A program made the position numbers and the translations under genes. The notes below the pieces were generated by a model, which had not been told where the DNA came from, did no database searches, and saw only the letters and a program-made list of their open reading frames with translations. This document shows positions 2,028-59,940 of a stretch of 64,000 nucleotides of DNA, piece by piece; the stretch's first letter is position 1, and each line of letters opens with the position of its first letter. Where the stretch lies: the IMG/VR virus record IMGVR_UViG_3300027754_000034, positions 193,206 through 257,205 of that record; one strand, 5' to 3'.

Positions 2028-3761
2028 ATGAAAATAAAATCAGGTGAAAAATATGGGGGTTTATTATACGAAGGGCCTGATTATGAAGGAAAGACAAGGG
2101 ATGTAATCGAATTAAAATGTAACTGTGGTAGATTAAAAAAAGTACGTATATATAATCTATTAAATGGATCTACCAAAAGATGTGGATTGTGTAATTCTAT
2201 TACCCTTAAAAAGGGTGATGTATTTGGTAAATTATCCTACTTAGGTCCTACCATTGAATTACCAAAAGGGTCTAAGCGTAAAATTGAGGTTAAATGTGAT
2301 TGTGGTCGTCATAAAGATATTAAGCTAGTAAATTTAATAAATGGACTTAGTACCTCTTGTAATGAGTGTAATCACATTTTACTTAAATCGGGTGAAAATT
2401 ATGGAAAGATTAAATATATTGGTTCGGACATTTACATAGGTCGGTCCAGTCATAAAAAGTTATCATTTGAGTGTGAGTGCGGTCGTCTCCATATTACTGA
2501 ACTTCAGTATTTAAATGACACCTCCTCATGCGGCAAGTGTGCTAATGTTATTTTAGAAAATGGTGAAAAGTACGTTAATTTTAAATACTTCGGAGAGCGT
2601 ATAGAAATTTCTCCATATAGTAATAAGAAATTATCATTTGAATGTCGTTGCGGCACTATTAAGAATATATCGGTTCAATATATTACTAAAAATCAAAAGT
2701 CGTGCGGAAGTTGCCGAAATCAAGTCTTTGGTTGGTATCAAAATAACGCAGATTTATTGAAAAATGGTGTTCCTATTGATGGTATGTTACCGATTGGGGG
2801 ACCAATTGTTTTAGAAAAAATAAAGAATGCGAGTGTTCCATTTTTGGCGCAATGTTGTGTATGTGGTAAGCAGTATAATCCGAGATATAAGGACATTAAG
2901 CGTGGTCTTTCGTTAACGTGTGGTTGCACTCAAAACAAAACATCTTCATACAGTCTATTAATTTCGGATTACTTAAGTTCCCTAAACATAATTCATTTTT
3001 TAGAGTATAAAGTTAATGGTTATTTTTACGATGTTTATATACCTTCGGCGAATTTGCTAATAGAAATAAATGGACTCTATTGGCATTCCTCAACTTTAGT
3101 ATCTAACCTTGATGCACTTAAATATAAAACCGCATGTGAAGGTAATTATGATTTTATGATGATATATGAAGATGAAATCATAAATAAGTTTAATCTAGTA
3201 AAAGCATTGGTATTTAACCGCATTAAGTCTAAATCTTTCGTCTCTTTAAGACCCTCTCAGTGTGTAATGAAAAGGGTAGATAATCATGGATTAAAGGAAT
3301 TACTAAACAACCATCACTATTTAGGTACCTGTACATTTAAGATAGGGTATGGGGTATTTTATGAAGGAATGCTTATAGCAGGCATTACTTTTTCTAGACC
3401 CACCAGGCAATCATCCTATGATTGGGAACTGACTAGGATGGTTAGTGACTCTAAGTATAAAGTACATGGAATATGGAGTAAACTCTGTGGTTTATTCATC
3501 AGGGAAATAAACCCAAAATCAATGGTTTCATTTTCTGATAATAGACTATTTTCTGGTTTAGTGTATTCGAAGATTGGCTTTAAATATGATGGTAATGTTC
3601 GCCCTGATTATTATTGGGTAAAAGGGAAAAACAGGTACCATAAATCAAGGCTCAGGAAGAAAAAAGGAGAAGTAGGAACTGAAAATGAGTTAAGAATTTC
3701 CCAAGGTTATAGAAAAATAATGGACCTTGGCAAGAAGCGTTGGATATTAAATGTAACTTAG
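2028..3761 (+). CDS. Zn-ribbon repeat array + PD-(D/E)xK nuclease + Hef/Mom-like GNAT domain (homing-endonuclease-like)
   Basis: Four ~58-aa CxCG...SCxxC repeats, then FYDVYIPSANLLIEINGLYWH, then C-terminal HHYLG...WELTRM...SFSDNRLFSGLVYSKIGF. Confidence 0.75.
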   Translation: MKIKSGEKYGGLLYEGPDYEGKTRDVIELKCNCGRLKKVRIYNLLNGSTKRCGLCNSITLKKGDVFGKLSYLGPTIELPKGSKRKIEVKCDCGRHKDIKLVNLINGLSTSCNECNHILLKSGENYGKIKYIGSDIYIGRSSHKKLSFECECGRLHITELQYLNDTSSCGKCANVILENGEKYVNFKYFGERIEISPYSNKKLSFECRCGTIKNISVQYITKNQKSCGSCRNQVFGWYQNNADLLKNGVPIDGMLPIGGPIVLEKIKNASVPFLAQCCVCGKQYNPRYKDIKRGLSLTCGCTQNKTSSYSLLISDYLSSLNIIHFLEYKVNGYFYDVYIPSANLLIEINGLYWHSSTLVSNLDALKYKTACEGNYDFMMIYEDEIINKFNLVKALVFNRIKSKSFVSLRPSQCVMKRVDNHGLKELLNNHHYLGTCTFKIGYGVFYEGMLIAGITFSRPTRQSSYDWELTRMVSDSKYKVHGIWSKLCGLFIREINPKSMVSFSDNRLFSGLVYSKIGFKYDGNVRPDYYWVKGKNRYHKSRLRKKKGEVGTENELRISQGYRKIMDLGKKRWILNVT

Positions 3762-34073: not shown

Positions 34074-35309
34074 ATGCGTACACGTACCACCTGGCAGGGC
34101 AAGGGAAGCGAAACCGCGCGTCAGGCGACAACGGTCCGCCGTGCGGATATCTATGACATGAACTTTGGAGGACCACGTCCCCAACCTGCTCCGGACCAAT
34201 ATATGGCTCCGGATGCAGGTCCAGATAAGTGGGCGGAGACTCCAGCGTCATATGACCGTATTTCTGAAGAGTATGATTCAAAGGGTCATGTTCTTCGCAA
34301 CGAAAACGGTATGGCGGAGTTCCGGAAAAATACTTTTGATCGTCCTTCATGGGGTGACGAGAAGAAATATGACAACCGTACAGCTTCAGAACGCAAGGCA
34401 GTTGCCGCTCACAGACTTGCTTCATATTTATTAAAGACAACTGACCGTGGCCTTGTTCGCAAGGTCGCTCTCGGATTCATGTCAATGCCCGATGCAGCTG
34501 TTAGTACAGCTCTTCGTGCAGTTGATCAGATTTCTCCCAAGTCTCTCCCAGATGAATCTCGGTTCAAGCGTGCCTTTGCTTGTACTAAGTTAGCAGCTGG
34601 AATGCTTGGCGATGGTTCTACAGAGGAGTCAGTCGAACGTCTCGCTCGTTCGATCTACGAGGTCGACGACCCTACTCTTCGTTCCATTGTGAAGTCTGTT
34701 GCTATGGCGAAGATCGCCCAGCAGCAAGAGGAAGAGGAAGAGGAAGAGGAAGAGGAAGAGGAAGAGGAAGAGAAAGATGCCTCTTCTATGAAGCCTGAGC
34801 ATCCTGCTAAGCAAGCTCAGGAAGAGGAAGAGAAAGATGCCTCTTCTATGAAGCCTGAGCATCCTGCTAAGCAAGCTCAGGAAGAGGAAGAGGAAGAGGA
34901 CTCCTGTGGTTCTGATTCCATGATGGGTGGCATGCATGCTCAGGCAGAAGAGGAAGAGGAAGAGGAAGAGGAGGATGAATCCGGCGTCCCAGTTGATGTC
35001 CAGATTATGCTCGAGCAAATGAAGCTTCCTGCCATGAGCGGTCTTCCTGCCATGTCAGAGTCTCCTGCAGCTCCTGCAGCTCCTGCAGCTCCTGCAGCTC
35101 CTGCAGCTTCGGTTGCAGCTTCTTTAGAGGCTCTTTTTTCTGATGATCCTGAGGTTCAGGCTCACCGCGAAATCATGGCAGCTTCAAACCCTGGCTTTAA
35201 GTCAGGACGAGTTGCCTCGACCAGTGGTGCTAAGAAGCTCGGTAAAGTCCAAGCTTCCGATCAGAAGAACGCAACTTCTTCTTTAGAAGCATTGTGGGAT
35301 CGTTCCTGA
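34074..35309 (+). CDS. Capsid scaffolding protein
   Basis: RBS AGGAG; poly-Glu tracts, PAA repeats, C-terminal anchor LEALWDRS; directly upstream of decoration and MCP genes. Confidence 0.72.
   Translation: MRTRTTWQGKGSETARQATTVRRADIYDMNFGGPRPQPAPDQYMAPDAGPDKWAETPASYDRISEEYDSKGHVLRNENGMAEFRKNTFDRPSWGDEKKYDNRTASERKAVAAHRLASYLLKTTDRGLVRKVALGFMSMPDAAVSTALRAVDQISPKSLPDESRFKRAFACTKLAAGMLGDGSTEESVERLARSIYEVDDPTLRSIVKSVAMAKIAQQQEEEEEEEEEEEEEEEKDASSMKPEHPAKQAQEEEEKDASSMKPEHPAKQAQEEEEEEDSCGSDSMMGGMHAQAEEEEEEEEEDESGVPVDVQIMLEQMKLPAMSGLPAMSESPAAPAAPAAPAAPAASVAASLEALFSDDPEVQAHREIMAASNPGFKSGRVASTSGAKKLGKVQASDQKNATSSLEALWDRS
34727..35108 (+). repeat. (GAGGAA)n tracts, a 60-bp tandem duplication (about 34761-34890) and a 9-bp x4 repeat (about 35063-35108)
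   Basis: agaaagatgcctcttctatg recurs at 34771 and 34831; cctgcagct occurs four times. Confidence 0.9.
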
Positions 35310-36193: not shown

Positions 36194-37081
36194 ATGGCAT
36201 ACGGAGTACAGGTGGTTGATAACGCCATCAAAGAGCAGATTGTTGACAAGTTCATTGGAACGAGCGCTGGTCGTCGCCACTTAGCGGCTTCTATGATTCA
36301 GCCTCTTCGCGAGCGTCGCGATTATTCGTCCGTTGGCCGCAAGACGTTCCTCGTCGAGCAGCTACCGGACGGAGCGCTTCCCATCTACGACAAGGACCCC
36401 GACGTCGTTGCTTACGTCATCGGGGAAGAAGGCGAGTCGATCACGGCGGTTTCTAAGCCCCGCCGTGTTATCTTCCCGCTCTTCGAGATCGCGGCCCTCC
36501 CCAAGGCTCCTCTTACGCAGATCAAGGAGCGTCGTTACGACCTCCTCAAGCGTATGCAGGACCTTGGTAAGGCTCAGATCCAGGCTGCTGAGGACGATCG
36601 CGTGTTCAGCATCCTCGATGCTATCGCGGTTAATGGCTTCGACAGCCTTCCTGGTGGTACGAACCCGGATATTCCGGTCGTTGCTCCCATCTCGCCTGCC
36701 ATCCTTGCGGATGCGTTTGCCGAGATCGAGCGCCACGACCTGCGTGTTGCTCGCGTTTATATGAACGCGACCGATTACGCAGACGTTCGTAAGTTCGGAC
36801 GCGACGTTCTCGATATCGAGAGCCAAGCGACGCTCTGGAAGACCGGTATGATGGCAACGGGCTGGAACGCCCAGTTCATCGTCTCGCGTCTCGTTCCCGC
36901 AGGCGTTGTTTACGTCTGCTGCGAGCCCGAGATGTTTGGTCGCATCCCGGTTCGTACTGAGCTGACCGTATTGAGCGCGGATAATCCCGAAGAGCGCACA
37001 ATCGGGTTCAGCATGTTTGAGAATCTTGGTATTGGCGCATACAATCCACGCGGATTAGTGCGCCTCATCGTCCAACGCTGA
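36194..37081 (+). CDS. Major capsid protein (HK97 fold)
   Basis: RBS AAGGA; 295 aa with AASMIQPLR, AQIQAAEDDRVFSILDA, C-terminal LGIGAYNPRGLV; strongest codon bias in the window; followed by a terminator. Confidence 0.85.
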   Translation: MAYGVQVVDNAIKEQIVDKFIGTSAGRRHLAASMIQPLRERRDYSSVGRKTFLVEQLPDGALPIYDKDPDVVAYVIGEEGESITAVSKPRRVIFPLFEIAALPKAPLTQIKERRYDLLKRMQDLGKAQIQAAEDDRVFSILDAIAVNGFDSLPGGTNPDIPVVAPISPAILADAFAEIERHDLRVARVYMNATDYADVRKFGRDVLDIESQATLWKTGMMATGWNAQFIVSRLVPAGVVYVCCEPEMFGRIPVRTELTVLSADNPEERTIGFSMFENLGIGAYNPRGLVRLIVQR

Positions 37082-37102
37082 TTTTCGGAATTCCGGAAAT
37101 CA

Positions 37103-37136
37103 TTAAGCCCCGGTCCTTGATTGGATCGGGGCTTAA
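37103..37136 (+). terminator. Terminator after the MCP
   Basis: ttaagccccggtcc-ttgatt-ggatcggggcttaa then ttgtttt. Confidence 0.78.
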
Positions 37137-37185
37137 TTGTTTTATATCCCAGTACAGAGGCTTATAACCAAATGTAAAATTTTAT

Positions 37186-38688
37186 ATGATGTGCAGAATA
37201 TGCAATGCTGTTAGCCAGCACGATCTTTGCAATGTATGTCGTCAGGATACTAACTACTTAGTAAAATACCCAGTATTAAAGAATATCCTTACAGATTCAG
37301 CCTTAGAGGTCTTGGATTTTAATCCCTCGCGCTCTGACTTTCAACGAGTAGACGTTATATGTGGTGAATGCAAGAGTACTAATAATATAGATTTAGTTAG
37401 CATCCTTAAATATATAAGACGTCATCTAAAAAAGAATCCCTATAACATATATAAGTGTCATTCATGTTCTAAAAGAGGGGAATCTCTCATTAGTCTCAAA
37501 GAGGTGATGCCGATCATAGATATGAAACTCACACAGGAAAAACATGGTGGAATAGGTAAAAATGTAAAAAAGTCCCTTGTTGTGGTCAAATGCGAGGATT
37601 GTTATGAACTATCAGACATTAAGTTAAGTAGTTTACTGCATGGGGCTAGAAGGCATCAGAAGCTAGGTCGAAAGTGTATTTACAAGTGTTTTAAGTGTGG
37701 TGTTCTATTGCCGGATGCCATAAAGAAGTCCAATGATGCCAGAGCTAAGCAGTTAGCTGTAGGAGCCCGTTCTCATATCGAAGTCGCTTTAGCCAATAGA
37801 TTAAAGGCTTTGAATATAGAATATGAGGAGTAGTTTCGTACCGATATGTATGTTTGGGACTTTTACCTCCCTAAGTATTTATTATTAATAGATGTAAATG
37901 GAGAATACTGGTATGGACTATCTCGGAATAAATCAAAAGATAAGTCTAAACTGACTTATGTAGAAAATTATCTACCTGAATATAAAACCCTAATCATAGA
38001 GGAAAAGCGTTTTCTAAACCCCTTGATGGTAGATAAAATAATTAAGGACGCCATAGGAGAATCTAAGAAGATTACGGTAGAAGAGTTTAGCTTATTGGAT
38101 GTGATCATTAATCAGTCCTCAAAGGTATCTAAGTCCAAAAGGTCTACGGAATCTGATTTTTTAAACTCTTATCATTACTCAGGATTTGGTCGGAACGGGA
38201 AATTAGTAATTACGGCACATCTTAATGAATCATTGGTGGCACTTTGTAAATTTAGTGGTACGACTCGACAAGGCACTGCTAAGTCTTTGGGTTATAAATG
38301 TTATGAAGTCCTGGAACTTGACAGATTCTGCATACATCCTTCTTATCATAAAAAGAACTTCGCTTCTTGGTTTTTGTCACGATGTATGAAATTAGTATTT
38401 GAATCGAATAAACTTATGCAATGTTTGGTATCATTCGCAGATCCCACATATGGTCATACCGGCACTATTTATAAAGCCACAAATTGGGAAATGAAAGGCA
38501 AAACCAATCCAAGTTACCATTATATGGATCACTTAGGGGTTCCAGTCAATAAGAAGAGGATTTATGACTTTGCACAAAAACTTCGGATGAAGGAAGCTGA
38601 ATATGTTGAACTTCATGGACTACAGAAGTTCTCTGAATTACCCAAGATTAAATATGTTTACAAGCGTTTTTCATCCGGGTCTAGATAG
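37186..38688 (+). pseudogene. Zn-ribbon + nuclease + Mom-like fusion interrupted by an in-frame TAG at 37831-37833
   Basis: ORFs 37186 and 37846 share a frame; the stop aligns with Gln in the 49218 paralog (IEYEE*FRTDMYVWDFYLP vs ISYKEQYVVGPYIFDFYLP); the Mom-like domain is intact. Confidence 0.8.
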
Positions 38689-38835
38689 TTCTGTTGGTAT
38701 CATGTTCCAAATGGGTGATGGGGATCATTACCTTTTCATTAGTATGAATTTACTGTGTTGATGTTCGTTCATATTTGTGCTTCGCTATTTATTAGAACAT
38801 ACTTATCCTTTAATTTTTTATGTCACACATAAAAT

Positions 38836-39336
38836 ATGAATCGTAGTGCTATTTCTCCTTCGCGAATCTCAACGTCTCTGCGTCGCATAGCTTCCGCTAT
38901 CGAGAATTCGGAGAATCCCTCACGTGAGTTGGTAGCAAGGGAGTTACAACGTCTAGTAAGAAAAATAGCTGGTAACGAAGACGGAATTTCAGTACTTGGT
39001 CAAACGGTAAATGTTGAGGTTCCCGGTTTGGGTCTCGTACCTGTAATACTTACTAAAGTCGAATTCTTTGATGAGAAGAATACTCGAAATGTGGTAGGAA
39101 CTATAAATGGTTTTATGGTCAAGACTAGTACATACAGTAGATCTTATAAGGTAGATCCTACTGATATCCTTCCTGTGGAGTTAAAGCAATATTTCGATCC
39201 TGAAGGATTCCGACCTGTCGACGCTTTTGCCATCGCAATAGACAAAATTCTTAAGAATTATGGGATAGAGGACGAGTACCCAATTATAGAAAATGGTATA
39301 TATTTTTCTAGTGAGCAGGATGACGACTCAATATAA
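38836..39336 (+). CDS. Hypothetical protein with LRRIA..IE.S.NPS leader
   Basis: Leader shared with the 60016 and 61100 genes. Confidence 0.75.
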   Translation: MNRSAISPSRISTSLRRIASAIENSENPSRELVARELQRLVRKIAGNEDGISVLGQTVNVEVPGLGLVPVILTKVEFFDEKNTRNVVGTINGFMVKTSTYSRSYKVDPTDILPVELKQYFDPEGFRPVDAFAIAIDKILKNYGIEDEYPIIENGIYFSSEQDDDSI

Positions 39337-39353
39337 CGATAAAGAATAGTAGA

Positions 39354-39382
39354 CTACAGGATTCCTCATCGAAATCCTGTAG
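39354..39382 (+). terminator. Hairpin after the 38836 gene
   Basis: ctacaggatt...aatcctgtag. Confidence 0.5.
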
Positions 39383-39615
39383 AGTGCTCTACACGCATTT
39401 AATTTATAAAATGTGTTAAGTATATAGGGAAATAAAGTGGAGAAGTATTCATCCTCCCTGGGTCTAAAGTTAGTAAGTACATAACAATGTGATTAAAGAA
39501 ACTCGGGATATTGAAGTTCAGTATAAACCCGGCCCACATGACGACGTTAGAACATGTGGTTCCTTTATATAATAAAAACCAGGAATAACTAATGATTTTT
39601 TTAGTATAGTATTCT

Positions 39616-39914: not shown

Positions 39915-40175
39915 ATGAAAATGCTTAACGTTGTTTCAGTTTTGATTCTAGCTCTCGTGTCTTGTGGTAAGGACGAAAGTAAGCCTGTTGATGCCGCTTC
40001 TTCGGCTTCCGTGGGCTCTGGTGGCTCCGGTGGTGCCAAAATGGTTAGTGGTTCAGGAGGCGCAGACGGAGACGGAGGAACGGGCGGAGCGGTTGCATCC
40101 TCGGTTTCCGGTTCTGGTGGAGCCGGTATGGGTGGTTCTGGTGGAGCCGGAATGGGTGGTTCTGGCGGCAAGTGA
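39915..40175 (+). CDS. Gly/Ser-rich small lipoprotein
   Basis: RBS GGAG; signal peptide with lipobox LVSC; GGSGGAGMGG repeats. Confidence 0.8.
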   Translation: MKMLNVVSVLILALVSCGKDESKPVDAASSASVGSGGSGGAKMVSGSGGADGDGGTGGAVASSVSGSGGAGMGGSGGAGMGGSGGK

Positions 40176-49217: not shown

Positions 49218-50648
49218 ATGAATGGAGAAAAACTAGCTAAATATTTAGCTACGTTAGAGCCTGGGTATACGAATAAATCCAGAATAACTTATACTTGTGA
49301 GATGTGTGGTATTCAAAATCACATTATTTTAAAATGCTTTAAAGAAAAAATATCTAAGGGCTCGTTATATTGTAAGAAGTGTTCACTGAAGCAGAAATGG
49401 CAAGATGAAGAATATCGATCTAAAATAAAGAAAAGTCAAGAAATAATATGGAATGAAACTGATACGAAAAATAAAATATCGGAAAAAAGCAAGAAATTGT
49501 GGCAAGATCCCGAATACAAATCTGCTCAGTTAAAAATTCACTCCGACCCCGAATATCTAAAATCAGCTAGAGAACATTCAATAGACAATTGGAAGAGTGT
49601 AGAATTCAGAGAAAACCAACTGAAAACTCGAAATACTCCTGATTTTAAAGCAAAACAGTCACAATCAATGCGTGATTTATGGAATTCTAACAAATATGTA
49701 GAAAAAACCCTTCTGTCCTTATCAAAAAAATTCAGTAGTGACTTTAAATCATCGTTAGAGATCATAACATCTAATATTTTAACTGCTCTTAGTATTTCAT
49801 ATAAAGAGCAGTATGTAGTAGGACCCTATATTTTTGATTTTTATCTTCCCGATTTTAAAGTATATATTGAATGTCAAGGAGAGTATTGGCATTCATTAGA
49901 ATCTGCTGTTAAGCGTGATGCGAGTAAATCTACTTATCTAAGGAAGGCTCATTCTGATAGTAAGTTTTTGTACTTAAATGAGGTAGATTTCTGCAATCCT
50001 ACTTTAATCAAGCAAAAAATTATTAGTATTTGTGGTTCGACTGCCATAACACAGGTTAAGTCGTTCGAATTAAAAAGTGTAGATATTAAGTTAATTAAAA
50101 AGGATGATCGGGATTTTAATTTAGCACATAACTTGTTAACTAGTTTTCATTATGCGGGTTTTGGTAGAGCTGCTAAGGTAATATTTGGAGCATATAAGGA
50201 TAAGGAGCTCATAGCCGTATGTAAGTTTTCACCGCCAATAAGACAGGAAGTGGCCACCTCTTTAGGCATTAGTCCTAAAAATATGCTTGAGCTTGATAGG
50301 TTCTGTATAAAACCAGATAGGCAAATAAAGAATTTTGCTAGTTGGTTTTTATCGAGAGCAGCTAAACTCATTTTTAGTATAGATTCTTCAAAATCTCACT
50401 TGGTGTCTTTTGCTGATAGCACTTACAATCACTTAGGAACTATTTATAAAGCAGCCAATTGGGCGTATGTTGGTGTTGTTTCCCCTGATTATTACTACGT
50501 TAATGGTCAGGGCTGGATATTACACAAAAAGACATTATATAATCAAGCTGTAAGAAATAAAATGAGGGAGTCTGATTATGCTGAAAAGCATCATTATGTA
50601 AAAATATACGGAAAAGAAAAATATAAATTTATTCTTGCTAAGTCTTGA
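49218..50648 (+). CDS. Zn finger + helical repeats + PD-(D/E)xK nuclease + Mom-like GNAT fusion
   Basis: CEMC..CKKC; W-anchored ~20-aa repeats; FDFYLPDFKVYIECQGEYWH; FHYAG...LELDRFCI...SFADSTYNHLGTIYKAANW. Confidence 0.8.
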   Translation: MNGEKLAKYLATLEPGYTNKSRITYTCEMCGIQNHIILKCFKEKISKGSLYCKKCSLKQKWQDEEYRSKIKKSQEIIWNETDTKNKISEKSKKLWQDPEYKSAQLKIHSDPEYLKSAREHSIDNWKSVEFRENQLKTRNTPDFKAKQSQSMRDLWNSNKYVEKTLLSLSKKFSSDFKSSLEIITSNILTALSISYKEQYVVGPYIFDFYLPDFKVYIECQGEYWHSLESAVKRDASKSTYLRKAHSDSKFLYLNEVDFCNPTLIKQKIISICGSTAITQVKSFELKSVDIKLIKKDDRDFNLAHNLLTSFHYAGFGRAAKVIFGAYKDKELIAVCKFSPPIRQEVATSLGISPKNMLELDRFCIKPDRQIKNFASWFLSRAAKLIFSIDSSKSHLVSFADSTYNHLGTIYKAANWAYVGVVSPDYYYVNGQGWILHKKTLYNQAVRNKMRESDYAEKHHYVKIYGKEKYKFILAKS

Positions 50649-58035: not shown

Positions 58036-59940
58036 ATGTATAATTGTGAGTATTGTGGGAAAGAATTTCCACGACCAGTCACATCTGGTCATAAGAGGAA
58101 GTGTCCGGAGTTCCTCGCAGCTAAGCCCTTAGATGAGAGAAAACCACCTGCATGTCTTTGTGGTCATCAAGAAAATTCCTTCACTAGTATGAAGAGACAC
58201 AGAGGTATATGTGAATTATGGAAAAATAGAGATAAAAAACAAGTAACTAATGAAAGAATAATAAATACTTTCGAAAAAAGGTATGGGTCAGGTGTAACTA
58301 ATGCTATTCATATTCCAGATGCTAGGAGAAAAAAGGAAGAAACCAATCTAAAGAAGTACGGGGCTATAAATACCTTTTGTAAGGATTCTATATTATATGA
58401 TCAAATTCAAAGTTATTGGAATGGAAAAGATAGGTCAGCTCACTTAGATAAAAATAACTGGGCGCGACCTGAAGTTAAAGCCAAGATTAAAGAATCTAAT
58501 TTAAGAAAATATGGTGTAACCAATCCGTCTTTACATCCAGAAATTCGTGCTAAACAGCTGGCCACTTCTAAGGAGCGTTATGGTGATGAACAGACTTTAA
58601 GAGTTCCTGAAATTAGAGCCAAGGGAATAAATACTATGATTGAAAAATATGGAGTTCCCAATGCAATGAAACTTGAAGAAATCCAAAATAAAGTCAAGGG
58701 AACTAATTTAGAAAATTACGGTGTTGAATGGACTACTCAAGATATGAATACACGTTTAAAACAATATGAAAGCCAGATTAATCATTACGGTAGTTATTAC
58801 TTTCAGACTACTGAGGCTAAGAAAATTATAAAAGACAAATTTCCTGAATCATTAGACAAATTTCATGCTACCAACATAGAACGCTATGGGGTCCCCCATC
58901 CTATGCAGAACCCCGAGTATGCTAGAAATCAATTACAACATTCTAGACGTTCAGGACCGAATAATCTAGAGAAAAAATTCCAGAGCATCTTCCCTCAATT
59001 TTTATTTACAGGAGATGGTTCATACTGGAGATATTTACCAGCATTAAGTAAGAATAAAAACCCTGATTTTCTTCTGATAGGTCCCGAACCTGAAAATCCG
59101 TTCCATGGTGCAAACTCAATAGTAGAAATATTTGGTGATTATTGGCATTCTGAACGTTTTACAGGATTAAATAATGAAGACCATGAATCTTTGACTATTG
59201 CAGCATGGAATGAAATAGGTATGAATTGTTTAGTTATCTGGGAAAATGAATTTAAGACAAATAATTGGAAATCTAAAGTAAAATATTATCTTAATAGGAT
59301 CAAGATAAGCAATTCAGTACCTGTTGGTGTCAAGCGTAATCCGTCACTTATCAATCAGGATTTGGTAGATTTTTCCTTTTCAGATATTAAGATATCACGT
59401 CTATCTAGTTTCGATGACGCTAAAAAGTTTTTAGATGACTATCATTATTCTGGATATGGGCGTGCAGGATCTGTAAATTATGGAGTGTATTTAGGTACCG
59501 ATTTGCTTGCAGTTGTTAAATTCGCCTCGCCTGTCCGTCAGGGCATCGCCGCCACTCTCAAAATAGAGTCAAAGCAGCTTTTGGAGTTAGACCGTTTTTG
59601 CATTCACCCGTCTCGTCACAAGAAAAACTTTGCCTCATTCATCATGGCTCGTGTAATTCGCCTTATTAAGCGGGACTTTCCTATCATTCGTAAGTTAGTT
59701 AGCTTTGCCGATCCTCGTGCTGGTCATACCGGTCATATCTACAAGGCATCTAACTGGACCGATTTAGGTAAAACTGCTCCCTCTTATTATTACCTCGATC
59801 CTAATGGAAATGAAGTTAACAAAAAGACTCTTTACCAGTCCGCCAAGCGTCAAGGCCTAATAGAGCGCGAATATTTTGAGTCTTTAGGTTATAAGAAAGT
59901 GCAGACACCCGCGAAATTTAAGTATTCCTACACTTTATGA
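58036..59940 (+). CDS. Zn finger + KYG(V)-repeat array + PD-(D/E)xK nuclease + Mom-like GNAT fusion
   Basis: About 8 (K/R)YG repeats; NPDF...IVEIFGDYWH...VIWENE; YHYSG..GVY..LELDRFCI..VSFADPRAGHTGHIYKASNW. Confidence 0.82.
   Translation: MYNCEYCGKEFPRPVTSGHKRKCPEFLAAKPLDERKPPACLCGHQENSFTSMKRHRGICELWKNRDKKQVTNERIINTFEKRYGSGVTNAIHIPDARRKKEETNLKKYGAINTFCKDSILYDQIQSYWNGKDRSAHLDKNNWARPEVKAKIKESNLRKYGVTNPSLHPEIRAKQLATSKERYGDEQTLRVPEIRAKGINTMIEKYGVPNAMKLEEIQNKVKGTNLENYGVEWTTQDMNTRLKQYESQINHYGSYYFQTTEAKKIIKDKFPESLDKFHATNIERYGVPHPMQNPEYARNQLQHSRRSGPNNLEKKFQSIFPQFLFTGDGSYWRYLPALSKNKNPDFLLIGPEPENPFHGANSIVEIFGDYWHSERFTGLNNEDHESLTIAAWNEIGMNCLVIWENEFKTNNWKSKVKYYLNRIKISNSVPVGVKRNPSLINQDLVDFSFSDIKISRLSSFDDAKKFLDDYHYSGYGRAGSVNYGVYLGTDLLAVVKFASPVRQGIAATLKIESKQLLELDRFCIHPSRHKKNFASFIMARVIRLIKRDFPIIRKLVSFADPRAGHTGHIYKASNWTDLGKTAPSYYYLDPNGNEVNKKTLYQSAKRQGLIEREYFESLGYKKVQTPAKFKYSYTL

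What the first reader, a model, noticed from the sequence alone, without database searches (positions are those of the whole stretch)
37186..38688. Nuclease-Mom fusion split by an amber codon at a conserved Gln, leaving the Mom-like half intact
Seen: a single TAG at 37831 aligns with Gln in the paralog, an ATG follows four codons later, and the nuclease core also deviates (IDVNG for IE..G, YWY for YWH) while the Mom-like domain keeps all motifs. TAG ends other genes normally (e.g. 22728, 23316, 38688), so genome-wide recoding is not supported. Inferred: domestication in progress (nuclease lost, modifier kept), or a read-through switch if a suppressor tRNA is encoded elsewhere.
Basis: partly seen in the sequence, partly recalled or inferred. 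Interest (0 to 1): 0.6.

Follow-up and report, generated by a model that had tools for sequence, protein, structure and literature searches.

The report
Freshly broken mobile nuclease–Mom gene
A selfish "homing-endonuclease-like" gene of a large freshwater phage, which joins a DNA-cutting domain to a Mom-type DNA-modifying domain, has very recently picked up a stop codon and lost a catalytic histidine; this is ordinary decay of one copy, though the gene family itself deserves study.

Summary
Window 37186-38688 is one 500-codon frame broken by a single TAG (37831-37833), with an ATG four codons later. All 13 aligned full-length orthologs (46-85% identity) have Gln there. This copy alone has Tyr (TAT, 37912) for the nuclease His. 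Against the two nearest orthologs both are C-to-T changes (CAG, CAT). "IDVNG" is the orthologs' normal motif, not a deviation.

The protein is a Hef-like free-standing mobile endonuclease:
- three Zn-ribbon modules;
- a Vsr/EDxHD nuclease (PDB 3r3p, E 9e-9);
- a Mom-like GNAT (PDB 8bv8), with 6 of 7 Mom active-site residues.

Six paralogs lie in the 257-kb phage contig. The gene sits just 3' of the major-head-protein terminator. That site is hypervariable: this ortholog fills it in 8 of 54 relatives, scattered over the head-protein tree.

dN/dS against the closest intact ortholog is 0.08 in all three domains, and this lineage shows no excess of changes. So the stop is very young: a freshly inactivated mobile nuclease gene. 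Domestication is not shown.

Read-through is unsupported. TAG ends 32 of 211 long ORFs, the contig (about 60% complete) has no CUA tRNA, and no ortholog shares the stop. Three assemblies carry TAG, but raw reads were not available.

The parts
36194..37081 (+). Major head protein gene (context). Homology with relatives runs through this gene and ends within about 65 nt after its stop.
   Evidence: phrog_2522 major head protein, E 2.7e-46. 481 relatives found. Ends of homology.
37102..37137 (+). Terminator-like hairpin (15-bp stem) followed by a T-run, after the head gene. The variable region begins just after it.
   Evidence: Hairpins at the same place in relatives.
37158..37168 (+). Promoter-like motif AGGCTTATAAC about 20 nt upstream of the ATG. 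It is conserved in the occupied loci L004 and L001.
   Evidence: Alignment A3. Inference only; not called by the sigma-70 scan.
37186..37833 (+). ORF-N: three Cys4 Zn-ribbon modules (presumed DNA-binding part) plus the first helix of the nuclease domain with the first catalytic Glu (E199). It ends at the premature TAG.
   Evidence: weak Zn-ribbon hits; invariant Cys pairs; 3r3p alignment starts at profile position 200.
37831..37833 (+). Premature amber codon. It is CAG (Gln) in the two nearest orthologs.
   Evidence: The same TAG is in the JGI 3300009181 contig and in a Logan contig of SRR5818192.
37846..38688 (+). ORF-C: the rest of the nuclease domain plus the complete Mom-like GNAT domain. 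Its ATG is ancestral (the DMY motif of the orthologs). GAGGAG lies 15 nt upstream, outside the 5-10 nt spacing usual in this genome.
37768..38085 (+). Vsr-like (EDxHD-type) nuclease domain, split by the TAG. Motif residues are E199, D225, N238, Y243 (His in relatives) and D252.
   Evidence: Profile A1 against PDB 3r3p, E 9e-9. Single sequence E 7.7e-4. Residue tallies.
37912..37914 (+). TAT (Tyr243) where orthologs have CAT (His). This His is the counterpart of the general base His69 of Vsr and His213 of I-Bth0305I.
   Evidence: Roles of the residues are from PMC3239194.
38128..38661 (+). Mom-like GNAT domain. H330, Y331, R380, S394, D419 and Y429 correspond to Mu Mom H58, Y59, R111, S124, D149 and Y159. 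Mom R151 is Thr here, as in most of the family.
   Evidence: Pfam PF25680 E 2.2e-19. 8bv8 alignment. Foldseek E 1.7e-9. Residue list from PMC13219725. Tallies.
2028..3761 (+). Intact paralog (577 aa): repeated Zn ribbons, nuclease and Mom-like domain.
   Evidence: phrog_559 and phrog_3339 'homing endonuclease' cover nearly its full length.
49218..50648 (+). Intact paralog (476 aa).
   Evidence: Pfam Mom 1e-23 plus weak DUF559, MTES_1575 and Vsr hits.
58036..59940 (+). Intact paralog (634 aa) with a DUF7487 N-terminal part.

Best explanation
The locus is a free-standing, Hef-like mobile endonuclease gene. Its domains are Zn-ribbon DNA-binding modules, a Vsr/EDxHD nuclease and a Mom-like GNAT.

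It lies in the variable spot just after the major-head-protein terminator of a large freshwater phage.

In this phage lineage the copy has very recently suffered two C-to-T changes in the nuclease domain. CAG became TAG at codon 216, and CAT became TAT at the general-base histidine, codon 243.

Shown here:
- the two lesions and their derived state;
- the intact state of every ortholog;
- the patchy occupancy of the site;
- uniform long-term purifying selection on all three domains.

Inferred:
- The full-length nuclease is no longer made, so the copy is at the first step of the usual decay of a homing-endonuclease gene after it is fixed in a population.
- A 280-aa nuclease-dead Mom-like product could still arise by termination-reinitiation at the ATG 12 nt after the stop. 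Nothing here shows that it is made or selected.
For: One gene, broken once:
- The read-through product has 99% coverage with ~495-aa orthologs at 71-85% identity.
- CAG and CAT in both nearest orthologs make both changes derived.

Family:
- Profile hits to the I-Bth0305I nuclease 3r3p (9e-9) and to Mu Mom 8bv8 (9e-7).
- Foldseek top hit 8bv8.
- Campylobacter-phage 'Hef-like homing endonuclease' genes cover 92% of ORF-C.
- PHROG homing-endonuclease families match the paralogs.
- Six paralogs lie in 257 kb, with GC of 33-37% against 39.8% for the genome.

Mobility:
- The ortholog is present in 8 of 54 relatives with enough flank.
- Occupancy needs at least 6 changes on the head-protein tree, at least 4 of them forced by well-supported branches.
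- L012 shows head gene, terminator and the downstream-gene homolog with nothing between.
- No intron family is found, so the gene is free-standing.

Recency:
- dN/dS is 0.080, 0.078 and 0.084 for the three domains, with dS near 1.
- Amino-acid changes are 22 on this lineage and 22 on the intact relative's.
- There are no further stops or frameshifts.

Not an assembly slip:
- Three assemblies are identical over the site, and the Logan contig has depth 16.

Only this copy is broken:
- All other syntenic copies found are intact, with Gln and His.
Against: - Two hits in about 110 nuclease codons and none elsewhere is more targeted than neutral decay predicts. That pattern fits selection against the nuclease activity.
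- His-to-Tyr at the same position recurs in three other, otherwise intact homologs (P0060, P0110, P0113), so Tyr may be tolerated rather than inactivating.
- Only contigs could be laid, not raw reads. A CAG allele may coexist in the population.
- Endonuclease and homing activity are inferred from family membership, not tested here.
Confidence: 0.68

Rival explanations
1. Functional split. The nuclease has been disabled under selection. ORF-C, and perhaps ORF-N as a DNA-binding protein, is kept and expressed by termination-reinitiation, so the phage retains a Mom-type DNA-modifying activity without the cutter.
For: - Both lesions fall in the nuclease domain, while all six conserved Mom active-site residues and the fold are intact.
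- An ancestral ATG lies 12 nt after the stop.
- The Mom residues are at least as conserved as the nuclease residues across 119 homologs.
- Nuclease-site variants with intact Mom domains recur (P0017, P0060, P0110, P0113).
Against: - The three domains do not differ in dN/dS, and ORF-N shows no relaxation.
- No second case of a split or of a stand-alone half was found. The shorter hits P0031 and P0028 are mis-called starts of intact genes, and ORF-N has no stand-alone relatives.
- ORF-C has no SD at the usual spacing.
- Cut from its Zn-ribbon modules, the Mom domain would lose its presumed targeting.
Confidence: 0.15
2. Programmed read-through or suppression. The TAG is decoded at low efficiency by a phage or host suppressor tRNA, or by leaky termination, so that little full-length nuclease is made.
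For: - The stop sits at a Gln codon one transition away.
- The contig is only about 60% complete by CheckV, so tRNA genes may be missing.
- A weak tRNA with anticodon UCA exists at genome 153497-153571 (30.5 bits), which shows that odd tRNAs occur in this phage.
Against: - Neither tool finds a CUA-anticodon tRNA.
- TAG ends 32 of 211 long ORFs, and code 11 already gives 90% coding.
- None of the other syntenic copies or 119 homologs has a stop there.
- The read-through product would still lack the catalytic His.
Confidence: 0.05
3. Artefact or minor variant. The TAG is a sequencing or assembly error, or a low-frequency allele that the assemblers happened to pick.
For: - All three assemblies that carry it may derive from one lake or sample.
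- Contigs hide minor alleles.
- The two other runs that hold fragments of this phage do not cover 37831.
Against: - Three assemblies by at least two pipelines are identical over 3 kb or more, at k-mer depth 16.
- The change is a clean substitution in non-repetitive sequence.
- A second damaging C-to-T lies 81 nt away on the same contigs.
Confidence: 0.07

Closest known systems
EDxHD (Vsr-like) homing endonucleases, prototype I-Bth0305I (PDB 3r3p; Taylor et al. 2011, PMC3239194)
   Same: - Homologous catalytic domain (profile E 9e-9).
- The same E, D, x, H, D motif positions in the intact relatives.
- Modular DNA-binding part N-terminal to the nuclease.
- Found in phages. That paper places the phage 'Hef type' enzymes in this family.
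   Different: - I-Bth0305I is intron-encoded, 266 aa long, and has NUMOD/HTH modules and no further domain.
- Here the gene is free-standing, has Zn-ribbon modules and carries a C-terminal Mom-like GNAT domain.
- This copy lacks the His and is cut by a stop.
Hef (homing endonuclease-like function) of T-even phage U5, and the 'Hef-like' free-standing endonuclease genes of Campylobacter and LIMEstone phages
   Same: - Multi-copy, free-standing genes next to conserved essential genes (PMC3322345, PMC3296691).
- Campylobacter-phage Hef-like genes align over 92% of ORF-C, covering the nuclease remnant and the Mom-like region.
   Different: - Identity is only 26-28%.
- The Campylobacter proteins do not reach Pfam Mom at E 0.01.
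- The U5 Hef sequence and its paper were not available, so direct kinship with U5 Hef is untested.
Phage Mu Mom (PDB 8bv8). It transfers glycine from Gly-tRNA(Gly) to N6 of adenine in dsDNA (PMC13219725).
   Same: - GNAT fold with the Mom-type helical insertion (Foldseek E 1.7e-9, 193-214 columns aligned).
- Counterparts of H58, Y59, R111, S124, D149 and Y159 are conserved.
   Different: - Mom is a stand-alone 231-aa anti-restriction enzyme.
- Here the domain is fused behind a nuclease.
- The essential R151 is Thr in 106 of 119 family members.
- Substrate and chemistry are unknown.
Defunct free-standing or intron homing-endonuclease genes in phages, such as the truncated I-TevIII of T4 (PMC2790892)
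   Same: A resident mobile nuclease gene that has lost its activity by mutation while the surrounding phage genes are intact.
   Different: Here the damage is minimal (one stop, one substitution) and demonstrably recent, and an intact second enzymatic domain lies downstream of the break.

Membership tests
EDxHD / Vsr-like homing endonucleases | Sequence homology of the catalytic domain to I-Bth0305I / Vsr | tested here: met
   Profile A1 against 3r3p E 9e-9. ORF-C alone E 7.7e-4. Weak DUF559, MTES_1575 and Vsr hits in a paralog.
EDxHD / Vsr-like homing endonucleases | Complete E-D-x-H-D catalytic motif in one polypeptide | tested here: not met
   This copy has E199 before the stop and D225, N238, Y243 and D252 after it, and the His is replaced by Tyr. 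The motif is complete in 12 of the 13 aligned orthologs; P0017 lacks the His.
EDxHD / Vsr-like homing endonucleases | Patchy presence at a fixed site among close relatives (mobility) | tested here: met
   8 of 54 loci are occupied, needing at least 6 changes on the head-protein tree, at least 4 forced by supported branches. L012 is an empty site.
EDxHD / Vsr-like homing endonucleases | Site-specific cleavage of the empty allele and gene conversion | not testable with these tools
   Needs purified intact ortholog and empty-site DNA, or mixed infections.
Hef (phage U5) family | Sequence similarity to U5 Hef itself | not tested
   The sequence and the paper (PMC1275590) are not held. Only Campylobacter 'Hef-like' genes matched. 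A nuclease-domain tblastn found no T4-type Hef.
Mom protein family (Pfam PF25680) | Score above Pfam's gathering threshold | tested here: met
   70.4 bits against 27.1 for ORF-C. 84-94 bits for two paralogs.
Mom protein family (Pfam PF25680) | GNAT fold with the Mom-specific helical insertion | tested here: met
   Model pLDDT 90.6. Best PDB matches are 8bv8_B and 8bv8_A, E 1.7e-9 and 2.4e-9, TM by target 0.61-0.62, over 193-214 columns. The model has helices 236-245 and 250-256 between strands.
Mom protein family (Pfam PF25680) | Active-site residues H58, Y59, R111, S124, D149, R151, Y159 of Mu Mom | tested here: inconclusive
   Six of seven are conserved (H330, Y331, R380, S394, D419, Y429). 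The essential R151 aligns with T421, which is Thr in 106 of 119 homologs.
Mom protein family (Pfam PF25680) | tRNA-dependent modification of adenine N6 in dsDNA | not testable with these tools
   Needs expression and nucleoside LC-MS.
Stop-codon-recoded phages (TAG read as Gln) | Many in-frame TAG codons in conserved genes, poor coding density under code 11, and a CUA suppressor tRNA | tested here: not met
   Code 11 gives 89.6% in ORFs of 150 aa or more. TAG ends 32 of 211 long ORFs. Seven tRNAs, none with CUA.

The most novel reading that the evidence does not exclude
The nuclease-Mom fusions, and the nuclease-methyltransferase fusions that fill the same hot spot in sister phages, may be single-chain selfish modules built like restriction-modification systems.

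How it would work:
- The modifying domain marks the carrier phage's own DNA so that its nuclease spares it.
- Unmarked DNA of competitors that lack the element is cut and converted.

On that reading the broken copy is the only viable kind of loss mutant: cutter dead, protector intact. The six paralogs with different N-terminal modules would be six specificities.
Probability: 0.12. Interest if true: 0.75.

Novelty: new member of a known kind. Interest (0 to 1): 0.35.

Why it matters
The split itself is ordinary: a mobile nuclease gene caught at the very start of its decay. It is a clean, datable example. There are two derived C-to-T hits, no other damage, and an intact sister copy at 85% identity.

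The more useful result is the context:
- Hundreds of metagenomic phage proteins join a Vsr-type homing nuclease to a Mom-type GNAT, with the catalytic residues of both domains conserved.
- The same hot spot in sister phages holds LAGLIDADG and EndoVII-like nucleases fused to methyltransferase-like domains.
- Mom was recently shown to be a tRNA-dependent DNA-hypermodifying enzyme.
- I found no paper in the held library that discusses a Mom-like domain inside Hef-like endonucleases.

Testing what that domain does there could show how mobile nucleases avoid cutting their own carrier.

Tried and rejected
- Megablast of 12 kb around the locus against GenBank phages found no match.
- Genome-wide recoding is rejected. 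Code 11 gives 90% coding, and in-frame neighbours under other codes are no more than chance adjacency.
- A relaxed ARAGORN run gave 158 calls, three of them 'cta'. I disregard it as noise, because Rfam RF00005 confirms only the seven default tRNAs.
- The shorter homologs P0031 (305 aa) and P0028 (389 aa) looked like independent truncations. They are intact full-length genes with mis-called starts.
- ORF-N searched alone (118-376 aa range) has no relatives, so there is no recurrent split.
- NCBIfam has no model for the family.
- A nuclease-domain tblastn against phages found no T4-type Hef, and the original Hef paper is not held.
- Runs X2 and X3 hold near-identical fragments but none covers 37831, so there is no independent read support.
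- In three occupied/empty sister pairs, homology simply stops about 65 nt after the head gene. These pairs gave no clean right-hand insertion boundary.
- The sigma-70 scan found nothing convincing for ORF-C.
- No complex prediction was run, since I do not claim that the two halves bind.

Full report
**The sequence.** Window 37186-38688 is a single frame of 500 codons with one internal stop, TAG at 37831-37833. Four codons later an ATG (37846) opens a 280-aa ORF that ends at TAG 38688. The window is the last 64 kb of a 257,205-bp viral contig. The contig has 39.8% GC, is classed by IMG/VR as linear, and is about 60% complete by CheckV.

**Genetic code.**
- Under code 11, ORFs of 150 aa or more cover 89.6% of the contig.
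- Of 211 long non-overlapping ORFs, 104 end in TGA, 75 in TAA and 32 in TAG.
- ARAGORN and the Rfam tRNA model find the same seven tRNAs, none with anticodon CUA.
- The genome does not read TAG as sense in general.

**What the gene is.**
- The downstream ORF carries a Pfam Mom domain (70.4 bits, cut-off 27.1).
- Read through with X at the stop (P0001), the product matches 304 proteins. About 25 orthologs of roughly 495 aa align over 94-99% of its length at 46-85% identity.
- A profile of these orthologs hits two solved structures. One is the catalytic domain of the homing endonuclease I-Bth0305I (3r3p, E 9e-9), the prototype of the Vsr-like EDxHD family. The other is phage Mu Mom (8bv8, E 9e-7).
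- An AlphaFold model of ORF-C (pLDDT 90.6) has Mu Mom as its best PDB match (E 1.7e-9, 193-214 aligned columns).
- The N-terminal 190 residues hold three pairs of invariant CxxC motifs, that is Zn ribbons.
- Campylobacter-phage genes annotated 'Hef-like homing endonuclease' align over 92% of ORF-C. PHROG families annotated as homing endonucleases cover the paralogs nearly end to end.
- Taylor et al. place the phage Hef enzymes in the Vsr-like family (PMC3239194). Hef-like genes are known as multi-copy free-standing elements (PMC3322345, PMC3296691).
- The contig holds six paralogs with different N-terminal parts, all 33-37% GC.

**The lesions.**
- In the 13 aligned orthologs the TAG column is always Gln.
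- YWH is replaced by YWY in this copy only. Of the orthologs, P0003 has YFH and P0017 has lost the motif.
- The nearest orthologs are L004 (85% identity) and L001 (71%). Both have CAG and CAT where the window has TAG and TAT, so both changes are derived C-to-T transitions.
- By the 3r3p alignment and the published roles, the lost His corresponds to the general base, His69 of Vsr and His213 of I-Bth0305I. The first catalytic Glu (E199) lies upstream of the stop and the other motif residues downstream.
- The stop therefore cuts the nuclease domain itself.
- Across 119 homologs the nuclease residues are E 107, D 119, H 115 and D 117. The Mom-site residues H, Y and R are invariant, with S 113 (T in 6), D 117 and Y 118.
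- Six of the seven Mu Mom active-site residues listed in PMC13219725 have counterparts. The essential R151 is Thr throughout the family.

**Is it mobile?**
- The gene lies just 3' of the major head protein gene and its terminator hairpin.
- Of 54 related loci with at least 2 kb after the head gene, 8 carry this ortholog, 2 carry another Hef-Mom subfamily and 44 carry neither.
- On a head-gene tree the occupancy needs at least six changes, four of them forced by well-supported branches.
- L012 has head gene, terminator and then a homolog of the window's next ORF.
- Homology between occupied and empty sister loci stops about 65 nt after the head gene.
- There is no intron or other Rfam family in the window.
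- This is the pattern of a free-standing mobile nuclease gene in a hot spot.

**How old is the break?**
- Against L004, Nei-Gojobori dN/dS is 0.080 for the Zn-ribbon part, 0.078 for the nuclease and 0.084 for the Mom part, at dS near 1.
- With L001 as outgroup, this lineage and the intact L004 lineage each have 22 private amino-acid changes. For ORF-N the counts are 15 against 11, and for ORF-C 6 against 11.
- Head-gene DNA is about as diverged as the gene itself.
- All three domains have therefore been under strong constraint for nearly all of the time since the two phages parted. The part upstream of the stop has not started to drift.
- By a rough reckoning of mine from the counts, the stop is young relative to that divergence, at most a few per cent of the branch.
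- All other syntenic copies found are intact. The two shorter database hits are mis-called starts. ORF-N has no stand-alone relatives.

**Is the TAG real?**
- A Logan contig of the probable source run (25.9 kb, depth 16) is identical over 36500-39500.
- A 29-kb JGI contig is identical over 6.3 kb.
- These may all come from one lake, and only contigs could be laid. An assembly slip is unlikely, but a coexisting CAG allele cannot be excluded.

**Expression of the downstream half.**
- The ATG is ancestral.
- GAGGAG lies 15 nt upstream, whereas SD-like cores in this genome peak at 5-10 nt and occur before only about a quarter of genes.
- Reinitiation by ribosomes that terminate 12 nt upstream is plausible from general knowledge of translational coupling. 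It is an inference only.

**Verdict.**
- The best reading is a very recent inactivation of one copy of a Hef-like mobile nuclease-Mom gene.
- Domestication of the Mom half is possible, since both hits are in the nuclease. No rate difference, recurrence or expression signal supports it.
- Programmed read-through is unsupported.

**Context.** In sister phages the same spot holds a LAGLIDADG endonuclease fused to a methyltransferase-like domain, EndoVII-like proteins with a methyltransferase-like C-terminus, a Dam-type methylase, or a lone LAGLIDADG gene. Three nuclease folds, each joined to a nucleic-acid-modifying domain at one hot spot, suggest that modification may serve these elements as self-protection. 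That idea is untested.

Noticed in passing
Related loci L066:5162-7474, L036:5087-7399, L020:4995-6611, L029:4980-6563, L072:4978-5826, L083:5213-5935 (same site, 3' of the head gene): Sister phages fill the same hot spot with other genes. These are a 771-aa LAGLIDADG endonuclease with a methyltransferase-like C-terminus, ~530-aa proteins with an EndoVII-like N-terminus and a methyltransferase-like C-terminus, a Dam-type (D12) methylase, and a lone LAGLIDADG gene. Nuclease-plus-modification fusions seem to be a theme here.
   Followed up: partly
Genome (outside the window) G000:C1:153497-153571, minus strand: A weak tRNA-like gene with anticodon UCA, which would read TGA (ARAGORN 'SeC'; RF00005 30.5 bits, just over the cut-off). 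Its D and anticodon stems are poor. TGA is the commonest stop of the genome (104 of 211), so its role is unclear.
   Followed up: partly
Genome G000:C1:151741-151814, minus strand: The phage encodes a tRNA-Gly(UCC). Mu Mom uses Gly-tRNA(Gly) as donor (PMC13219725) and this genome has six Mom-like domains. This may be coincidence.
   Followed up: no
window 37158-37168; L004 and L001 at the same place: A conserved AGGCTTATAAY motif lies about 20 nt upstream of the ATG of the nuclease-Mom gene in three occupied loci. It is possibly the element's own promoter.
   Followed up: no
window 34074-35309: A 411-aa ORF between the prohead-protease-like gene and the head gene has long Glu runs and a duplicated ~20-aa acidic unit (the segment KDASSMKPEHPAKQAQEEEE occurs twice). 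It is likely a scaffold protein. The homologous ORFs in relatives vary in length from 368 to 479 aa.
   Followed up: no
window 39915-40175: A small ORF with a signal- or lipoprotein-like start and Gly/Ser-rich repeats (SGGSGGA, GMGGSGGA). A Pro/Glu-rich ORF overlaps it on the opposite strand. This is low-complexity DNA and its coding status is unclear.
   Followed up: no
Homologs P0060, P0110, P0113: The same His-to-Tyr replacement in the nuclease motif (YWY) has arisen independently in three otherwise intact family members from other subfamilies. Tyr may be tolerated at this position, or nuclease-dead full-length proteins may be kept.
   Followed up: partly
window 58036-59940 and 2028-3761: The paralogs carry quite different N-terminal parts: DUF7487 repeats in one and five or so tandem Zn-ribbon units in the other. 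This would fit different DNA specificities.
   Followed up: no
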